DNA from: Ylistrum balloti
Taxonomy: Eukaryota
DNA length: 64,000 bases
Assembly: GCF_031769215.1 (NCBI RefSeq)
Contig: NW_026782111.1
Span: 992,001-1,056,000 of the forward strand
Direction: 5' to 3'
Shown: positions 12,446-60,534 of the stretch, one piece after another
Layout of the letters: each line of letters begins with the position of its first letter
Numbering within the stretch: position 1 is the stretch's first letter
Notes under the pieces: generated by a model
Databases searched by the model: none
What the model saw: only the letters and a program-made list of their open reading frames with translations
What the model was told of the DNA's origin: nothing
Program-made: the position numbers and the translations under genes

Positions 12446-12737
12446 NNNNNNNNNNNNNNNNNNNNNNNNNNNNNNNNNNNNNNNNNNNNNNNNNNNNNNN
12501 NNNNNNNNNNNNNNNNNNNNNNNNNNNNNNNNNNNNNNNNNNNNNNNNNNNNNNNNNNNNNNNNNNNNNNNNNNNNNNNNNNNNNNNNNNNNNNNNNNNN
12601 NNNNNNNNNNNNNNNNNNNNNNNNNNNNNNNNNNNNNNNNNNNNNNNNNNNNNNNNNNNNNNNNNNNNNNNNNNNNNNNNNNNNNNNNNNNNNNNNNNNN
12701 NNNNNNNNNNNNNNNNNNNNNNNNNNNNNNNNNNNNN
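12446..12737. other. Assembly gap (N run)
   Basis: Run of N. Confidence 1.
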
Positions 12738-26642: not shown

Positions 26643-27707
26643 CTAGATACAAAGATACCAGATACAAAGAATCTTTGCTCTATGTCGAATATACACAGTT
26701 TTTTGTATCAGCTGTTCAAAGTTTGTAGCTTGACAAGCATGTCCTTAATCAGAAAGACAAGATCACAGTGTACACACAACAAAAGTTTGATCTTAAGACA
26801 TTTCTAGTTGTAATCTGGTATATTACATTTGTGGATTAAGAGCTTGAGGTTATCAGATAACATTTTGTTCAATGCTGGGAAAGTTCTGCGGTCGTCAGAG
26901 CAATCTCATTGAAAAACATTCTGTTTCTCTGGAATATGCTGTTCGAAGTTTGGCACCAGAAAAAAGTGCGAGATATCTATGATTAAATATCACATTTTGG
27001 AATTAAATCCAGAGAGGGCAGAGAACTGAGTAAACCTCTACCTAACAAGACCTCTGATCTACGGCACCAAAAACAGCTACTCTAAAATAATTGTATTTGA
27101 GTTAATTTTTTTGTTTTATTCTAAAATGGAAAAAATGCATTAAAAACGAAGAAAACCGCAATCTTTTTTAATTCTCAAAGAGAGAGCGGTTTTGTAATAT
27201 AAATGAAATGTATAAAGGCAGCCTTGAATAATGACTTGTTTTAGTTTAGACACGGAGTCACATCAGGTACATTCACCTGTTGTGGATTTAATAACGTGAC
27301 TGAGTTGTTGAAATGGAATCAGACTGAACAAGTCATACATATCTGGTCATTCAAAGTTCAAACTGAAAAATGCAGTTAAAATCGAAATTAATGTTGCCGA
27401 CATGTTTACAAAATCGGGAAACAAACTCAGGCTTAAAAACAAGGACACAAATTGAAGAAAAAAATACATTTACGCATCAGTAAAACTTCAATAAATACTA
27501 AATTCAGTTCCATATTTGTTCCGAAAGGATTAGCGTCTTCAGCTTCATTGACGACACATGTGCATCTCACTCAGTAAAAGTATATAATATCGAATTCTCC
27601 AATGCGACCACACTTCAGAACAACGAATTCCCCAGGAAAACTTATGATATGACCATAGAACAACTATATATATATATATATCAGACTTAAGCCATTGGAT
27701 ATCTTAA

Positions 27708-36120: not shown

Positions 36121-36560
36121 GAAATGAAATATTTCTCAATGAGACCACGGCGACGACCGTAAAACGTCCCAATAAGTTTAAATAGCCTGCATCTTTTAAA
36201 CTCTGTGACTAATTACTTAAGATGGAGTAATCACATGGAACCTTCATGTCACCAGAATGCGGGATCATTATACAATTGTTACTCTACGGTCGTATTTGTG
36301 TATTTTTCATGATGTTTTTTCTACCCTTTCTTTTAAATTTGTGAAATATGACACTTCAACAGTTTCTTGTTTGATGCCATTGTTATATGCCTATGTCATA
36401 ATATTGATATTTTTCGCTCATTCTTCTTTATGATCGTAAAAAATATCAATTGACTGTCATTTTCGATAAATAGAAGATTGTGCAAAGAGGCATGAGTGTA
36501 AAGCACTTGTCAATACAAATTTAGCATGAAATACAGAAGAGCCAAATAATGAATTAAACT

Positions 36561-36604
36561 GCATATCACAGCTGCTACTTTCTTCGAGGACTCGTTAGTG
36601 ATAC
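36561..36604 (-). ncRNA. Degenerate hammerhead copy with family flanks
   Basis: Minus strand: GTTTCACAACTTTGTCCCTCA GTATCA CTAACGA GTCC TCGAA GAAAGTAG CAGCTGTG ATATGC AGTTTAATTC. Confidence 0.7.
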
Positions 36605-38009
36605 TGAGGGACAAAGTTGTGAAACGTAGTAGACAACTCAGAAAAATGAAAATTAATCAAAAGAAAAGTAAAGTTCTAGGTGGAAAGGTGCACTAGCCCC
36701 ATAATCAAATAATTGTTATGAATTTTTTATACATCAGGTAATTTTAGAACTGTGTCAAGCACATAGGTATATTCACCAAGAATTGATATATACATTATAC
36801 TTATCAAATATTAATTAATTGTTTATCGTCAACATTTGTCGAGGAGATTCTCAAAAACGAAATATATCCTGAACAACTCGAGACGCATAGTTTGGCTAAG
36901 TTATGGATTGAATAATGCTGGTATTTGTTGCATATTGATGTGATAAATGCTTGAATGAAAATCGATGTATTCTACTTTCGGTTTATTTGAATGAAACTTA
37001 ATAATACAATATCGGCATATTTCATTTGGATTTGATATGTCAGAAATTAATATGCTGAAGAGTGTTGTTGTTCCTGTAATCAACATAAACTGCGGTGACA
37101 ATAGATTCTTTCATTGATTTCACATGAATCAAGGCAAGACACGTGAAAAGTCGTGGATCTGGAGACGTAGAGGAAATTGAATATCGATCTATGTTTTGGT
37201 CTTATGCAATAAACTGTAAATTACACACTGGGTACCATAAAGCAAGGAATAGTATAATATTGCCTCTATATACATATCGAGCAACAAGCATCAAGGTCAA
37301 AGAATGGCATTTTCAATACGAGATAGCAAAATTATAGGCGATGAAAATAAGAGAATACAGCCAGTAAACAAAATCGTAACTCTTACCAAAAATCGAAGAT
37401 GAAACTTGGCAATAAGTCGCCTTCGGCCATTCACCCGAAGAATCAGGCTCTTGGAGGAACAGTCTCAGTGTAGGGAATGAAGTACGAAACATGAACACCT
37501 GATCTTAGGGGAAACACAAATTGAAAACTAACGATAGAAGAATTGAAAGCATCACTATTGTAATACAGTTTTTTGGCAAGTTGTTCTGTTAAGGTTTAAG
37601 TACGTAGATATGAAGTTTAGTGCCTCTTGCAGACGAGTTTTGGTGTTCTTGGTTTCAACGTAAGATGGAAGGGATGGAAGATAAGTTTACATTCAGCATA
37701 GACTATGGTCTTGCTGAAGACAACTTGTCTGTAGATAAAGTGATGCAGAATTTGTACTAAAGATATAAGATTCAATAGCACTTTTCTATACAACTTTGAC
37801 TTTGATACCGTAGGGAAAAATAATTATGGAAACTTCATTATACAGTTGTTTTGTCCTATTTTGTCCTAAAGTAAATTTCTCAAATATTAAGTGAAGGATT
37901 ACATCTAATTTTACAACATTCTTAAACTGTCTTAGTTAATTTGATTGGTCAGTGTAAATATTTTTTCGATGATACCACGCTTGTAATTGTTCTTGTCTAT
38001 GTTGGAAGA

Positions 38010-38113: not shown

Positions 38114-39198
38114 TAACGAAATATTTACACTTACACAGTCTTATTACTGTGCAACATTACCAGATTAAAATGTTTAACATACTAGTATGGAAACATTGAC
38201 CTTTGAACCTGCGTATGAAAATGTTACAGGAACTACTTATGCCAAAAACATGGATTTTTTAAAAAACATTTTAACGTAAAAGGGTGATGTTATTTTCTAA
38301 GAAATGAAATATGTAAATAGAATTTAAAAACATAATCAAATAATACACCATGAATATTTTTTTATAAAAGTCAAAAAAAGGTAATAAGAACCCGCTATGG
38401 ATCGCTTTCACATTTTGTTGTCTGCAGCGTCGACGCTGTTAACAACGTCGGTATCAAAACGTATGAAAGCGGTGACTTACAGCAAGTGATATGTAAAATT
38501 CTTCATCGGAACGAATGAACAACTTCAACAGCTCTGATGAGAAAGGTTTAAGCATAAAAGATGAAGACATTAATCAGATTAAATATGATAATCCGTAAAA
38601 ATGTTTCTGTAATACTTAAAACCGAACCTTTATATCGCCGCGGACGAAAATGTTCAGTTTGTTGTGAAGAGTCAGCAGTGGCTGTTCTTCTAATTAAACC
38701 TCCTCCCACCAATGACCGACTTTTCCAGAGTGATTACGTCACGTACTTACAAGGATTGCTCTACAGTTGATTTTGATGAAAAGACACAGATGTGTTAATA
38801 TAGGGATAGGAATTTTATTTTATGTTAACTATGCTTTTATGGAGCGATTCCTCTACGGATATATTCTAGAGGAAGCGCTTAATAAATAACATTTATGACA
38901 CTTCATATGCAAAATTGATAGAAATCTATTTTCAGTAAAGCAATCGAGAAGGGGTGTTCGTGGTTAAGAAAGTGTGAAAACTGTTTACAGTTAAGCAAAT
39001 TATAAAACGGTGTCTGCAGTAGGACAAATGATAAAAATGTGTGGGCAGTTAGACAAATGTTAAAGATCTGTTCGCAGTGAGGTAAGCTGTGCAAATGTAA
39101 TACTGATATTAAAATAAATATATATAAATATACACAAATTAATTCCTTTAAACATGAACTTTGAGTGATGTGTAGTAGAACAAGTTATGAACTAAAAT

Positions 39199-39242
39199 GC
39201 AGCCTACAGCTGTTTTGTCCTTCTAGGACTCGTCAGTGATGA
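39199..39242 (-). ncRNA. Near-complete minimal hammerhead with a G12 to A change
   Basis: Minus strand: CATCA CTGACGA GTCC TAGAA GGAC AAAA CAGCTGTA GGCTGC. The family upstream flank extends to ~39430. Confidence 0.85.
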
Positions 39243-39492
39243 TAAGGACCTAAGTCATGAAACCTAGGAGGTGACTCTGGAAAACCCAAAGTGATCGAGT
39301 AGATATGCCAAAATCTTAGAGGAGCTGTTCGAATGAAAGAGACGTGCAGATTATGGCAAACGTCTGTAACTAAAAAGTCCACGAGTAATGTTGAGCACCT
39401 GCAGTCTCGAAGAATGTACAAATGACACGCATGTAAAGAACACATTTCAACACACACAAGAACTAGATACAGTACAGCCAAATAATTAAACT

Positions 39493-39524
39493 GCCTCATA
39501 CATCTGTTTCAGCCTTCTAGGATT
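39493..39524 (-). ncRNA. Degenerate hammerhead (CUGA core lost), one family monomer upstream of the 39.2-kb copy
   Basis: Minus strand: ATCC TAGAA GGCT GAAA CAGATGTA TGAGGC AGTTTAATT. Confidence 0.65.
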
Positions 39525-55992: not shown

Positions 55993-56072
55993 CTCCCCCC
56001 TCACAGCAACCTCCTCCCCCTCACAACCCCCCCCCCCCCCACCCCGCCTCACAACCCTCCCTCCCCGCCTCC
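55993..56072 (-). other. C-rich tract (G4 on the minus strand / i-motif potential)
   Basis: Multiple C-runs separated by TCACAA-like linkers. Confidence 0.6.
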
Positions 56073-56934
56073 CAATAAAACTATTCTGTATCTATGTGAA
56101 ACACATGAAAACATTTTGTATCCACGTTAATGTATGATGAAGTTTATAGACGAGATAATTGAAAATGATACCCATATCATATATTCTCTCAGTTCTGGTT
56201 TTTGCAAAAATGTTTGCCCACGCATTAAGTAGAAATAAATCCCTTCGAAAATAGGTTTTTTTTTACGGTAAGTGAAATAATTTCTTAAGAAAAAAAATCC
56301 TTTCTGATGATGGATATCTACATGTGGCTATATTCGCGTTAGAACGACAAGGAATTGTGTTTAAATATATCTCTTATATACATATCATATGTTTTGAGTT
56401 TTGTCGTATGACCTTATTAGCCGAATGGAAGAAATGGAAGATGAAAGGGAAAGCAAATATTTGAGTTAATTTTAGTGTGAAAGTGTTACCTGTTCTTGTT
56501 AATGAAATGAAATGAAATTTGATTTTCATCAACATGAAGAATACAAAAGTACATTTCATGTATACCTAAAGAGGATTAAATTTAGACAAACATGTTGTCC
56601 AATCCATTTGCTTTGCAATAAAAATCTTTTGAAATGAACTGAACAGAGGAAATGATCATCTGATACCTGATATAAAATGTGTTTGAATCTTTGAACGGAT
56701 AATTGAATACCTTCGTGTAGTGTCTGTAATGTAAACGAAAAACTACATTTGGTTCCGAGAACATTAAAAGATGGGTGACTGATTTAATGTTTCTGAAATC
56801 ATCCGGTATATGAAAATTGCAAAATTTATTGAACAAGGCATCGATGGTACTTACCAATCTAGATTTTGCTATTTCTTTCGATCACTTCGGATTGTCCTAT
56901 GTCGCCTCCCCAGGTTTCAAATGTTAAGCCCTTA

Positions 56935-57158
56935 GCGCCACTGACGAGTCCAAGAAGGACGAAACAGCTGTATGATGCAGCGTCACTGTCGAGTCCTAGA
57001 AGGACGAAACAGTTGTATGATGTAACATTACTGACGAGTCTGACGAGGACGAAAAAACTGTATGATGCAGCATCACTGACGAGTCCTAGAAGGACGAAAC
57101 AGCTGTATTATGTAGCATCACTGACGAGTCCTAGAAGGACGAAACAGCTGTATGATGT
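56935..57158 (+). ncRNA. Tandem array of five 45-nt minimal hammerhead ribozymes; unit 5 fully canonical
   Basis: CTG[A/T]CGA cores at 56941, 56986, 57031, 57076 and 57121. Unit 5 (57115-57158): stem I GCATCA/TGATGT, CTGACGA, stem II GTCC-TAGAA-GGAC, GAAA, palindromic ACAGCTGT, GTA triplet (cut 57152/57153). The family flank lies upstream from ~56800. Confidence 0.95.
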
Positions 57159-57450
57159 AGTTTAATTCATTGTTTAGTATTTCTCTGTTAGGGACTGGTT
57201 AGGGACAGAAGAGACCTCACAGACTCAGTAGCATGTTTCTCATTTATGTATAACTCTAGATATATATTAAATCGTGATTTTCACTTGTGTGTCCGTCCTT
57301 TGTGGAATCTTCAATAGAACATTCATTAAAGGCAACACTAACTGTCTGACACAGGTACAATTAGTGAATCGCCTTTCGTGATAACGATAAGGTAGATATG
57401 GCAAACATTCAATAAACAACCTGCATATGTTTCCGTGTTGCCAGAGAAAC

Positions 57451-57605
57451 NNNNNNNNNNNNNNNNNNNNNNNNNNNNNNNNNNNNNNNNNNNNNNNNNN
57501 NNNNNNNNNNNNNNNNNNNNNNNNNNNNNNNNNNNNNNNNNNNNNNNNNNNNNNNNNNNNNNNNNNNNNNNNNNNNNNNNNNNNNNNNNNNNNNNNNNNN
57601 NNNNN
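57451..57605. other. Assembly gap (N run)
   Basis: Run of N. Confidence 1.
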
Positions 57606-59307: not shown

Positions 59308-60534
59308 ATGAATTACAGTGAAAACGTGACAATGATTGGTAGCACTGACGTCATATCAACTGAAATATGGAACATCACTAATAGTTCAGTTGGCGTGACG
59401 ACAGATGTCTACTCCAAGTCGTCCTGTCCCAACATGAACGCCTCTGACTCGTCGGACAAGAGCGCACTCGAGGCGTTCAGTGTCCATTACGCTGGAGTTC
59501 ACGGTTATGTTAGTGTTTTTGTGTGCCTTTTTGGAATGCTTGCTAATACGGCAAATATTGTTGTACTTACTCGGAAGAAAATGATAACTTCAACAAATTA
59601 TATTCTAACTTGGTTAGCTGTCGCGGACCTGTTTACCATGCTTGACTACTTCCCGTTTGCTATCCATTTCTATATTCTGAAGGATCCGAAACTCCCCTTT
59701 CCAATGACGAAAGGTTACGGGTGGGTATGTTTTCTTATGTTCCACGCAAGTTTCAGTGTCGTGTGTCATACGATTGCGATATGGTTAACAATAGGATTGG
59801 CCATATTCCGTTTTATATTCATATGGTTTCCAACGAAGGGGGCTTTGTACTGCAGCCAACAGAAAGCTAAAAGAGCAGTGATAGGTGTTATCCTGTACAC
59901 AATAATCATATGCATACCAAACTATATGTCTAACGAAATCACGACATATTGCCTCGGTGAAGAGGAGCCCGTGTATTCGCTGGAGGTGAGGAAAGATGGA
60001 GCTTTTGTGGTGATAAATTCTGTGAACTACTGGACTCAAGCTCTGCTCTTCAAACTTGTGCCCTGTATCATGCTGACGTTGCTGACTCTGCTTCTTATCA
60101 CTGCCATGCATCGCGCTTACAAGCGGCGAGTTGCTCTGAAAAATCAAGGTAAGAAGGAGGATACGGACAAACACAACGAACACAACCGTACCACTCTAAT
60201 GCTGCTGGCAGTTGTCGTTCTTTTTCTTATTACGGAGTTACCGCAGGGCATTCTTACAATATTGAGCAGTTCTATTAAAGGGTTCTTCGATTCTGTCTAC
60301 ATGCCTCTGGGAGATCTTCTCGATATTGTGGCACTTTGCAATAATGCTATCAACTTTGTCCTGTATTGCGGTATGAGTACTCAATTCCGAAAAACATTTT
60401 TTGAAATTTTCTGCAGCTGTATTCCCGAGAGGAGGCCAGGATGGCGAAAACTGGGTGTGGTGACAGCCGAGAAAAATGGATGTACACCCACAACGACAAC
60501 CACCTCATTGTCAACTACTACTACCAAACTGTGA
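59308..60534 (+). CDS. Class A peptide GPCR, myosuppressin receptor / DMSR-1-like (lophotrochozoan myomodulin-receptor group), 408 aa, intronless CDS
   Basis: Seven hydrophobic helices. HGYVSVFVCLFG..NIVVLTRKKM..TNYILTWLAVADL, HTIAIWLT..LAIFRF, RTTLMLLAVVVLFLITELPQG and NFVLYCGMSTQFRKTF are typical of this family. N-terminal N-glycosylation sequons; AATAAA at 60558-60563. Confidence 0.93.
   Translation: MNYSENVTMIGSTDVISTEIWNITNSSVGVTTDVYSKSSCPNMNASDSSDKSALEAFSVHYAGVHGYVSVFVCLFGMLANTANIVVLTRKKMITSTNYILTWLAVADLFTMLDYFPFAIHFYILKDPKLPFPMTKGYGWVCFLMFHASFSVVCHTIAIWLTIGLAIFRFIFIWFPTKGALYCSQQKAKRAVIGVILYTIIICIPNYMSNEITTYCLGEEEPVYSLEVRKDGAFVVINSVNYWTQALLFKLVPCIMLTLLTLLLITAMHRAYKRRVALKNQGKKEDTDKHNEHNRTTLMLLAVVVLFLITELPQGILTILSSSIKGFFDSVYMPLGDLLDIVALCNNAINFVLYCGMSTQFRKTFFEIFCSCIPERRPGWRKLGVVTAEKNGCTPTTTTTSLSTTTTKL

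What the first reader, a model, noticed from the sequence alone, without database searches (positions are those of the whole stretch)
56935..57158. A minisatellite whose 45-nt unit is a complete hammerhead ribozyme, with a second (type III) ribozyme formed across each unit junction
Seen: five units at an exact 45-nt period, each with stem I, CUGACGA, stem II (GUCC-UAGAA-GGAC), GAAA, a palindromic ACAGCUGU and a GUA triplet. Established: minimal type I hammerheads with a palindromic stem III occur in Penelope-like elements and cleave poorly as monomers, working as dimers. Inference: the tandem register solves this in cis. The 3' stem I strand of unit n (UGAUG) is followed by a 3-nt loop (CAG/UAG) and CAUCA of unit n+1, and the palindromes of consecutive units pair into a stem III of up to 7 bp. 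This yields a type III hammerhead at each junction. Junction 3/4 (57058-57102; cut 57062/57063) has a perfect stem I, an intact core and a 4-bp stem III. Junction 4/5 (57100-57150) has a 7-bp stem III with one stem I mismatch. A transcript could therefore be cut into 45-nt units with 5'-OH and 2',3'-cyclic phosphate ends, a possible substrate for circularisation.
Basis: partly seen in the sequence, partly recalled or inferred. Interest (0 to 1): 0.9.

Follow-up and report, generated by a model that had tools for sequence, protein, structure and literature searches.

The report
Tandem array of minimal hammerhead ribozymes
Five head-to-tail copies of a 45-nt minimal hammerhead ribozyme, amplified from the ribozyme module of a common ~300-nt non-coding repeat; the "second ribozyme" at each junction is the long-known double-hammerhead fold seen from inside, and this partly decayed copy shows no sign of use.

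Summary
56935-57159 holds five 45-nt units, each a minimal type I hammerhead with a 2-bp helix III and a palindromic AGCU loop. Rfam's type III model also fits three unit junctions (36-41 bits, E about 1e-7), below its curated threshold.

A hammerhead with a short palindromic helix III that becomes active by pairing with a tandem neighbour is the classic double hammerhead (Forster 1988; Cervera & de la Pena 2014). With units only 3 nt apart, the inner active site of that dimer is automatically a type III hammerhead.

The array is the ribozyme module, copied five times, of an ordinary member of a ~300-350-nt non-coding repeat family. At least 10 copies and a second five-unit array lie in this window. 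No reverse transcriptase was found among the ORFs of 85 aa or more. Two of the five cores are damaged.

RNA-run contigs cover only the ribozyme units, never the flanks, so transcription of this locus is not shown. Cleavage, 45-nt products and circles remain untested.

The unusual part is a repeat period equal to the ribozyme itself. Unchecked first-stage notes report such arrays elsewhere in this genome. Verdict: new variant of a known kind, moderate interest.

The parts
56935..56979 (+). Unit 1. Core and helices II and III are intact; stem I has one C-A mismatch. Predicted cut after 56972.
   Evidence: Hammerhead_1 27.0 bits.
56980..57024 (+). Unit 2. The core carries A6U (CUGUCGA) and the palindrome is weakened (ACAGUUGU). 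Predicted cut after 57017.
   Evidence: Hammerhead_1 21.2 bits.
57025..57069 (+). Unit 3. The CUGACGA box is intact. Helix II and loop 2 are altered, C15.2 is changed to A and the palindrome is broken. Predicted cut after 57062.
   Evidence: no Hammerhead_1 match is listed for it (lower-scoring same-clan overlaps are dropped).
57070..57114 (+). Unit 4. Core and palindrome are intact; the stem I 3' strand is UUAUG (one mismatch). Predicted cut after 57107.
57115..57159 (+). Unit 5. Identical to the family consensus and a perfect minimal type I hammerhead. Predicted cut after 57152.
   Evidence: Hammerhead_1 32.7 bits against a gathering score of 34; 100% match to the consensus.
57055..57105 (+). 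Junction 3/4 type III fold, the inner site of the u3:u4 double hammerhead. The u4 core would cut after 57062.
   Evidence: Hammerhead_3 39.8 bits, E 3e-7, gathering score 48.5.
57100..57150 (+). Junction 4/5 type III fold with an 8-bp helix III. The u5 core would cut after 57107.
   Evidence: Hammerhead_3 41.0 bits, E 1.5e-8; constrained fold energy -10.2 kcal/mol.
56965..57015 (+). Junction 1/2 type III fold. It uses the damaged u2 core (A6U).
   Evidence: Hammerhead_3 35.9 bits.
56760..56934 (+). Upstream body of the repeat-family copy that hosts the array. It ends in CCCTTA (56929-56934).
   Evidence: Homology to 44700-44863, 36772-36606(-), 50378-50250(-) and 39316-39243(-).
57160..57330 (+). 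Downstream body of the same family copy, interrupted by an insertion of about 90 nt.
   Evidence: The GTTTAATTCATTG and TTCACTTGTGT...TTTGT blocks are shared with other copies.
43212..43436 (+). Second five-unit array of the same ribozyme, with units of 44-46 nt. Most cores are damaged, there is no upstream family body, and the downstream body is present.
39198..39536 (-). Head-to-tail pair of family units with hammerheads 294 nt apart, a retrozyme-like spacing.

Best explanation
The array is a local five-fold amplification of the hammerhead module inside one ordinary copy of a ~300-350-nt non-coding, hammerhead-bearing repeat family. That family is of the animal non-LTR retrozyme / Penelope pseudo-LTR-derived kind. 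The ribozyme is a minimal type I hammerhead whose helix III is only 2 bp, closed by the palindromic loop AGCU. As in all such hammerheads, the expected active form is the double hammerhead: the 8-nt palindromes ACAGCUGU of two units pair into one long helix III. Because the units here are separated by only 3 nt, the stem I 3' strand of unit n and the stem I 5' strand of unit n+1 form a 5-bp hairpin. The inner active site of each dimer is therefore topologically a type III hammerhead. The outer site is closed by the two outermost stem I strands. If this RNA were made, intact cores (u4, u5, possibly u1) could cut after 57062, 57107 and 57152 and release up to two 45-nt units. At this locus the array is most likely a neutral, decaying by-product, formed by slippage or unequal exchange between the short YA|G repeats that flank the single-copy ribozyme. 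Shown here: the anatomy, the family membership of the flanks, the model scores and the relative fold energies. Inferred: dimer-dependent cleavage, how the array arose, and its neutrality.
For: The period-45 array is real. Type I and type III covariance-model matches have E values from 1e-8 to 1e-2. The core pattern occurs 13 times against 0.01 expected. Both flanks of the array are homologous to single-hammerhead copies at 44700-44996, 36474-36772, 50119-50378 and 39187-39316. In the collapsed alignment the locus looks like any other family copy. Two units lie 294 nt apart at 39198-39536. Flanks are 66-75% alike, while the ribozyme is 80-97% alike. No RT or GIY-YIG domain was found in any of the 21 ORFs of 85 aa or more that lie clear of the assembly gaps; the only domain match passing Pfam's own cut-off is a GPCR. 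The double-hammerhead fold is 6.2-13.5 kcal/mol better than two monomer folds. The monomer minimum-energy fold, 70% of the ensemble, pairs C3-G5 with the helix III strand and is therefore inactive. The full-array minimum-energy fold pairs the palindromes of two units. Published work describes the tandem-dependent dimeric hammerhead model (PMC4209133 Fig. 1A and text; PMC6466107; PMC6765202) and derives retrozymes from PLE pseudo-LTRs, with satellite growth by unequal crossover (bioRxiv 10.64898/2026.07.22.740005). Decay is visible: A6U in u2, loss of C15.2 in u3, G12A in the single copies at 27707 and 39198, and no covariation beyond shuffles.
Against: No cleavage data exist. The active folds are not the predicted minimum-energy folds. 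All Rfam scores for this array are below the gathering thresholds. u5 equals the family consensus and u4 differs by one base, so part of the array may be young or still under constraint. Arrays made of exactly the ribozyme recur: a second one lies in this window, unchecked first-stage notes report up to ~105 units elsewhere, and 49-nt-period forms appear in RNA-run contigs. Plain slippage does not predict that recurrence. The RNA runs belong to 'organism A', which may not be the window's own species, so the lack of flank coverage is weak evidence against transcription.
Confidence: 0.78

Rival explanations
1. The array is a working self-processing unit. [quoted passage not shown] This is the first reader's reading, applied to this locus.
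For: u4, u5 and u1 have intact cores. The junction type III folds score 36-41 bits. The dimer fold is energetically favoured over monomers. Contigs from four RNA runs contain head-to-tail hammerhead units at summed word depths up to about 2,700.
Against: Those contigs do not cover this locus's flanks at all, and they join units by CCCTAA or CCCTTA (49-nt period) rather than by the 3-nt linker found here. Contigs cannot show RNA ends or circles. u2 and u3 are damaged, so a regular 45-nt ladder cannot form. PLE-type minimal hammerheads cleave poorly in vitro even as dimers (PMC4209133).
Confidence: 0.1
2. The 45-nt arrays arise at the RNA level. A cleaved and ligated 45-nt hammerhead circle, or a template jump of the retroelement's reverse transcriptase across the folded stem I, is copied by rolling-circle reverse transcription and inserted. 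The array would then be a footprint of a 'mini-retrozyme'.
For: The unit runs exactly from cleavage site to cleavage site of a retrozyme monomer whose body has shrunk to 3 nt. Arrays of exactly the ribozyme recur, in two registers of 45 and 49 nt. Array 2 lacks the upstream family body, as a 5'-truncated retro-copy would.
Against: Array 1 sits between both family flanks in the correct order. Array 2 shows unit chimeras typical of unequal exchange within DNA. No target-site duplications or stand-alone arrays could be examined. No 45-nt circle has been observed.
Confidence: 0.08
3. The sense-strand ribozymes act on the host transcript. If the array lies in a 5' intron or upstream region of the GPCR gene at 59308-60534, cleavage would modulate that pre-mRNA.
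For: The array is on the same strand as the GPCR ORF and 2.1 kb upstream of it. A first-stage note (s1-244257) predicts an intron here.
Against: No gene model or transcript was tested. The family is dispersed on both strands. The units are decaying. In vertebrates, retrozyme-type repeats are depleted in introns rather than recruited there (bioRxiv 10.64898/2026.07.22.740005).
Confidence: 0.03
4. The match is a chance resemblance, or the array is a coding minisatellite. The array is open in one frame (ORF 56866-57165, 99 aa).
For: 45 is a multiple of 3, and one frame of the unit has no stop codon.
Against: The core pattern occurs 13 times against 0.01 expected. Covariance-model E values reach 1e-8. 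The ORF has no Pfam match. The sister array has 44- and 46-nt units that break the frame.
Confidence: 0.01

Closest known systems
Double-hammerhead (dimeric) self-cleavage of newt satellite 2 and ASBVd transcripts (Forster et al. 1988, as described in PMC4209133 and PMC6466107)
   Same: Helix III is too short to be stable and is capped by a palindromic loop. Two tandem copies merge their helices III into one long helix, and each core cuts the other copy's site.
   Different: In those systems the two ribozymes are about 250-330 nt apart. Here they are 3 nt apart, so the inner stem I is a 5-bp hairpin with a 3-nt loop and the inner site becomes a compact type III hammerhead of about 51 nt.
Minimal type I hammerheads of Penelope-like elements (Cervera & de la Pena 2014, PMC4209133; Lunse et al. 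2017, cited in PMC6765202, not readable here)
   Same: Both are minimal type I motifs without loop-loop contacts. Both have a tiny palindromic helix III, are thought to work as dimers, and are very abundant and variable within a genome.
   Different: The published motifs sit in pseudo-LTRs that flank an RT/GIY-YIG ORF, or occur as dispersed single motifs. The tandems described in the text I could read are 0.1-3 kb apart. No RT or endonuclease was found among this window's ORFs of 85 aa or more. Helix II here is 4 bp, not the 6-8 bp of the Schistosoma and Drosophila consensus.
Metazoan non-LTR retrozymes (Cervera & de la Pena 2020, PMC7229834; Li et al. 2026 preprint)
   Same: The host repeat family here is non-coding, low in GC (35%) and about 300 nt long. 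It carries one type I hammerhead and occurs as solo copies and as a 294-nt-spaced pair.
   Different: Retrozyme monomers are 150-450 nt and give circRNAs of 170-400 nt. The array's monomer is 45 nt, the ribozyme alone. No circRNA evidence exists here.
Hammerhead plus reverse-complement telomeric repeat modules of Athena/Terminon PLEs (PMC6431247, PMC8557442)
   Same: In RNA-run contigs a CCCTAA or CCCTTA hexamer lies next to the hammerhead, and CCCTTA precedes unit 1 here.
   Different: Only a single hexamer is present, upstream of the ribozyme rather than in a 3' run, and the window has no telomeric context. The resemblance may be chance.
Synthetic rolling-circle transcripts of hammerhead-encoding DNA nanocircles (Daubendiek & Kool 1997; recalled from memory, not checked)
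   Same: These are concatemers whose repeat is essentially one hammerhead and which self-process to unit length.
   Different: They are artificial, with an 83-nt unit and a stable helix III. There is no genomic counterpart.

Membership tests
Hammerhead ribozyme (Rfam clan CL00010: RF00163 type I, RF00008 type III) | Conserved core: C3 U4 G5 A6 N7 G8 A9, G12 A13 A14, the A15.1-U16.1 pair, and H17 not G | tested here: met
   Met in u1, u4 and u5. Not met in u2 (A6U). Weakened in u3 (C15.2 changed to A).
Hammerhead ribozyme (Rfam clan CL00010: RF00163 type I, RF00008 type III) | Three helices around the core | tested here: met
   Type I register: helix I 5-6 bp, helix II 4 bp, helix III 2 bp. Junction register: helix I 5 bp with a 3-nt loop, helix II 4 bp, helix III 4-8 bp.
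Hammerhead ribozyme (Rfam clan CL00010: RF00163 type I, RF00008 type III) | Score at or above Rfam's gathering threshold | tested here: not met
   Best type I score is 32.7 against 34. Best type III score is 41.0 against 48.5. The only hit above threshold in the window (43346-43435, 38.4 bits) joins halves of two units of the other array.
Hammerhead ribozyme (Rfam clan CL00010: RF00163 type I, RF00008 type III) | Site-specific self-cleavage 3' of H17 | not testable with these tools
   Logan contigs show no RNA ends (table 6: none).
Dimeric (double-hammerhead) minimal HHR of Penelope-like elements | Very short helix III with a palindromic loop, plus a second copy in tandem | tested here: met
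   The motif C-AGCU-G lies within the 8-nt palindrome ACAGCUGU, and the neighbouring unit is 45 nt away. The dimer fold is 6-13.5 kcal/mol better than two monomers.
Dimeric (double-hammerhead) minimal HHR of Penelope-like elements | Location in a pseudo-LTR flanking an RT plus GIY-YIG ORF | tested here: not met
   No RVT or GIY-YIG match in any of the 21 ORFs of 85 aa or more that were scanned; those overlapping the N runs were left out. Degraded or intron-split ORFs were not excluded.
Metazoan non-LTR retrozyme | Type I hammerhead within non-coding tandem repeats of about 150-450 bp and low GC | tested here: inconclusive
   The host family fits: about 300-350 nt, one pair at 294-nt spacing, 35% GC. 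The 45-nt array itself is far below the size range.
Metazoan non-LTR retrozyme | Expressed as abundant circular RNA | not testable with these tools
   Only assembled contigs were available. Back-joints in contigs are equally explained by tandem DNA or RNA.
Athena/Terminon hammerhead-telomere module | A run of reverse-complement telomeric repeats directly adjoining the ribozyme | tested here: not met
   There is a single CCCTTA at 56929-56934. No CCCTAA-linked units occur in the window. CCCTAA linkers are seen only in RNA-run contigs.

The most novel reading that the evidence does not exclude
The 45-nt (and 49-nt) hammerhead-only arrays may be a genome-wide satellite that behaves as the smallest possible retrozyme. 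Array transcripts would cut themselves into ribozyme-sized units through cis double-hammerhead / junction type III folds. The units would be ligated into ~45-nt circles and copied by rolling-circle reverse transcription, which would explain why arrays of exactly the ribozyme keep arising in two registers.
Probability: 0.1. Interest if true: 0.8.

Novelty: new variant of a known kind. Interest (0 to 1): 0.45.

Why it matters
Hammerheads with a crippled helix III are thought to need a tandem partner, but in known cases the partner lies hundreds of bases away. An array whose period equals the ribozyme is the limiting case. Every junction is a compact, fully cis type III hammerhead, which gives a clean natural test bed for the dimer model: monomer versus two-unit versus array constructs. 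If such arrays are transcribed and processed, they would yield the shortest natural ribozyme-derived RNAs or circles known. They would also link satellite birth to ribozyme function. For this particular locus the practical result is more modest. It is a partly decayed copy of a repeat, so it should be annotated as a repeat and not as a gene.

Tried and rejected
1. Looked for an autonomous Penelope-like element around the array. 21 ORFs of 85 aa or more were scanned against Pfam; those overlapping the N runs were left out. Only a GPCR passed Pfam's own cut-off, so membership of a pseudo-LTR is not supported in this window.

2. Tested covariation on 17 hammerhead units from the window (alignment A1). 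Nothing exceeded the shuffled controls. The copies are too few, too related and too decayed, so this gives no support either way.

3. Scanned public collections for the unit and for the unit junction: two metagenome scans and one viral scan. All were blank, so no outside copies were available for comparison.

4. Looked for RNA evidence. All runs offered were assembled contigs, and one read-laying run was allowed. It showed ribozyme-only coverage and no ends, so neither cleavage nor circles could be tested.

5. Searched the window for CCCTAA-linked units. Two weak hits matched chance expectation.

6. Considered the coding reading of the 99-aa ORF through the array. Rejected.

7. Tried to read Lunse et al. 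2017 and Arkhipova et al. 2017. Neither is held. I therefore cannot exclude that head-to-tail ribozyme-only arrays are already described there.

8. The junction 2/3 palindrome shows one apparent compensatory pair: C to U in u2 opposite G to A in u3. It sits next to an A-G mismatch, and with this many pair opportunities it is not distinguishable from chance.

Full report
**What is there**

Positions 56935-57159 hold five head-to-tail units of exactly 45 nt. Tandem Repeats Finder gives period 45, 4.9 copies, 84% matches, no indels and score 339.

Each unit reads, 5' to 3': (G)CAUCA, CUGACGA, GUCC-UAGAA-GGAC, GAAAC-AGCU-GUA, UGAUG, and a 3-nt linker (YAG or UAA). This is a minimal type I hammerhead. 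Helix I is 5-6 bp and helix II is 4 bp. Helix III is 2 bp, closed by the palindromic loop AGCU. The cleavage triplet is GUA.

A degenerate core pattern hits the window 13 times against 0.01 expected from shuffles. In an E-value scan Rfam's type I model matches u5 (32.7 bits, threshold 34), u1 (27.0) and u2 (21.2).

The units are not equally intact:
- u5 equals the family consensus.
- u4 has one stem I mismatch (UUAUG).
- u1 has one stem I mismatch.
- u2 carries A6U in the invariant core (CUGUCGA) and a weakened palindrome.
- u3 has lost C15.2 and part of the palindrome, and has an altered helix II and loop 2.

**The junction ribozyme**

Take the sequence from the palindrome of unit n, through its GUA and the hairpin UGAUG-YAG-CAUCA, then the core and helix II of unit n+1, to the palindrome of unit n+1. 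This has the order and pairings of a type III hammerhead.

Rfam's type III model scores it as follows, against a threshold of 48.5:
- 41.0 bits at 57100-57150
- 39.8 bits at 57055-57105
- 35.9 bits at 56965-57015

The predicted cuts after 57062, 57107 and 57152 are placed correctly.

Writing out the pairings shows what this fold is. When the 8-nt palindromes ACAGCUGU of two units pair, A15.1 of one unit pairs with U16.1 of the other, so each core is presented with the other unit's cleavage site. The core of n+1 then needs a stem I made of the 3' strand of n and the 5' strand of n+1. That is the junction hairpin. The core of n needs the two outermost strands.

The "type III ribozyme at the junction" is therefore the inner active site of the double hammerhead. 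That structure is the established explanation for hammerheads with a short palindromic helix III in tandem repeats. Sources: Forster 1988 as described in PMC4209133 (Fig. 1A and text), PMC6466107, which names the palindromic loop and the tandem arrangement as requirements, and PMC6765202. What differs here is only the spacing: 3 nt instead of hundreds.

**Energetics**

With nearest-neighbour parameters, the double-hammerhead fold of two adjacent units is 6.2-13.5 kcal/mol more stable than two separate type I folds. For u4+u5 the values are -18.1 against -4.6 kcal/mol.

The isolated unit prefers a different structure, at 70% of the ensemble for u5. In it C3-G5 pair with the CAG of the helix III strand, which would be inactive. 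The minimum-energy fold of the whole array pairs the palindromes of two units, with z = -3.0 against shuffles. This fits the idea that the monomer is off and the dimer is on.

However, the unconstrained minimum-energy folds of the two-unit RNAs are 7-16 kcal/mol lower still and are not hammerhead folds. Thermodynamics alone does not predict activity.

**What the array belongs to**

The same ribozyme occurs at 27707(+), 39198(-), 39492(-), 42741(+), 44861(+), 54204(+) and 54565(-). More degenerate copies lie near 36590(-) and 50235(-). A second five-unit array lies at 43212-43436.

The flanks are homologous over about 165-190 nt upstream and 90-110 nt downstream, at 66-75% identity. The ribozyme itself is 80-97% alike. 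With the array collapsed to one unit, the locus 56760-57330 aligns like any other copy. At 39198-39536(-) two units lie head to tail with hammerheads 294 nt apart.

Of the 28 ORFs of 85 aa or more, 21 were scanned against Pfam; the seven that overlap the assembly gaps at 12446-12737 and 57451-57605 or lie antisense inside the GPCR ORF were left out. None has an RT or GIY-YIG domain. The only large ORF is a rhodopsin-type (Srw-like) GPCR at 59308-60534.

The host element is therefore a non-autonomous, non-coding, low-GC (35%) repeat of about 300-350 nt carrying one hammerhead. That is the description of animal non-LTR retrozymes (PMC7229834). A 2026 preprint derives these from Penelope pseudo-LTRs and describes their growth into satellites by unequal crossover (10.64898/2026.07.22.740005).

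Single copies in the window carry classic dead-core changes, such as G12A at 27707 and 39198. The 17 aligned units show no covariation beyond shuffled controls. These are old, decaying insertions.

**How the array probably arose**

In single copies the ribozyme is bracketed by a short direct repeat...TTA|G-CAUCA upstream and ...GAUGYA|G-UUUAAUU downstream. Slippage or unequal exchange at that repeat gives exactly the 45-nt unit.

The second array shows chimeric units. The 5' half of its u1 equals that of its u5, and the 3' half of its u1 equals that of its u4. It also contains 44- and 46-nt units. This is the signature of unequal exchange within DNA. The two arrays share no diagnostic variants, so they probably expanded independently.

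**RNA evidence**

Many RNA runs of a coded "organism A" hold 31-mers of the consensus units, while the long flanking stretch is held well only by a run of "organism B".

I laid the contigs of four RNA runs on 56500-57450. Depth appeared only on the ribozyme units, up to about 2,700 summed word depth on u4-u5, and was zero on both flanks. Transcription of this locus is therefore not shown. If organism A is a different species, the test says nothing about this locus.

The contigs do show that head-to-tail hammerhead units exist in RNA libraries. There they are joined by CCCTAA or CCCTTA, giving a 49-nt period; joints reach depths of 201 and 443. They are not joined by the 3-nt linker found here. 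Contigs cannot show RNA ends or circles.

**Elsewhere in this genome**

Unchecked first-stage notes list 45-nt hammerhead arrays of 9, 10, about 48 and about 105 units on other pieces of this genome. If correct, the phenomenon is a genome-wide satellite, and the scan has found it before on other DNA. I could not verify those notes.

**Novelty**

The ribozyme class, its dimer mechanism and its retroelement context are all known. In the literature I could read, tandem hammerheads are 0.1-3 kb apart or sit in monomers of 150-450 nt. I found no description of a repeat whose period is the ribozyme itself.

Two key papers, Lunse 2017 and Arkhipova 2017, were not available. I rate the finding a new variant of a known kind, with moderate interest.

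The more exciting reading is a self-processing mini-retrozyme that gives ~45-nt circles and spreads by rolling-circle reverse transcription. It is not excluded, but nothing here speaks directly for it. I put it at about 10%.

Noticed in passing
window 56500-57450, RNA-run contigs laid: In contigs of four RNA runs of 'organism A', consecutive hammerhead units are joined by CCCTAA or CCCTTA, giving a 49-nt period. Joints reach depths of 201 and 443. CCCTAA is the reverse complement of the TTAGGG telomere unit, which recalls the hammerhead-plus-telomere-repeat modules of Athena/Terminon elements. A single CCCTTA also precedes unit 1 at 56929-56934.
   Followed up: partly
window 43212-43436: This is a second five-unit array of the same ribozyme, with units of 44-46 nt. 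It has chimeric units and mostly dead cores (UUAACGA, shortened helix II, GUG in place of GUA). Rfam's only hit above threshold in the window (43346-43435, 38.4 bits) is an artefact-like join of the 5' half of one unit and the 3' half of the next.
   Followed up: partly
window 39198-39536 (-): Two family units lie head to tail with hammerheads 294 nt apart, a retrozyme-like monomer length. The upstream ribozyme (39492-39536) is heavily degraded.
   Followed up: partly
window 56866-57165 (+): A 99-aa ORF runs through the whole array, because 45 nt is 15 codons and one frame of the unit has no stop codon. It has no Pfam match, and the sister array is not in frame. This is a mechanical ORF and should not be called a gene.
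   Followed up: yes
window 57188-57204 (+): Two TTAGGG hexamers 11 nt apart (57188-57193 and 57199-57204) lie inside an insertion of about 90 nt that interrupts the downstream body of the repeat copy.
   Followed up: no
window 59308-60534 (+): An intact single-exon ORF of 408 aa encodes a rhodopsin-family, Srw-like neuropeptide-type GPCR (Pfam 7TM_GPCR_Srw, E 4e-36). Its nearest Atlas clusters are dmsr-1-like and FMRFamide-receptor-like proteins of arthropods and molluscs. The array lies 2.1 kb upstream on the same strand.
   Followed up: partly
window 42741-44905 (+): Three same-strand hammerhead sites (42741, the array at 43212-43436, and 44861) lie within 2.2 kb. They may be remnants of a longer tandem cluster of the repeat family.
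   Followed up: no
window 55995-56075: A C-rich low-complexity tract with units of about 20 nt, of the form CCCCCCTCACAACAACCCCC, lies 0.9 kb upstream of the array.
   Followed up: no
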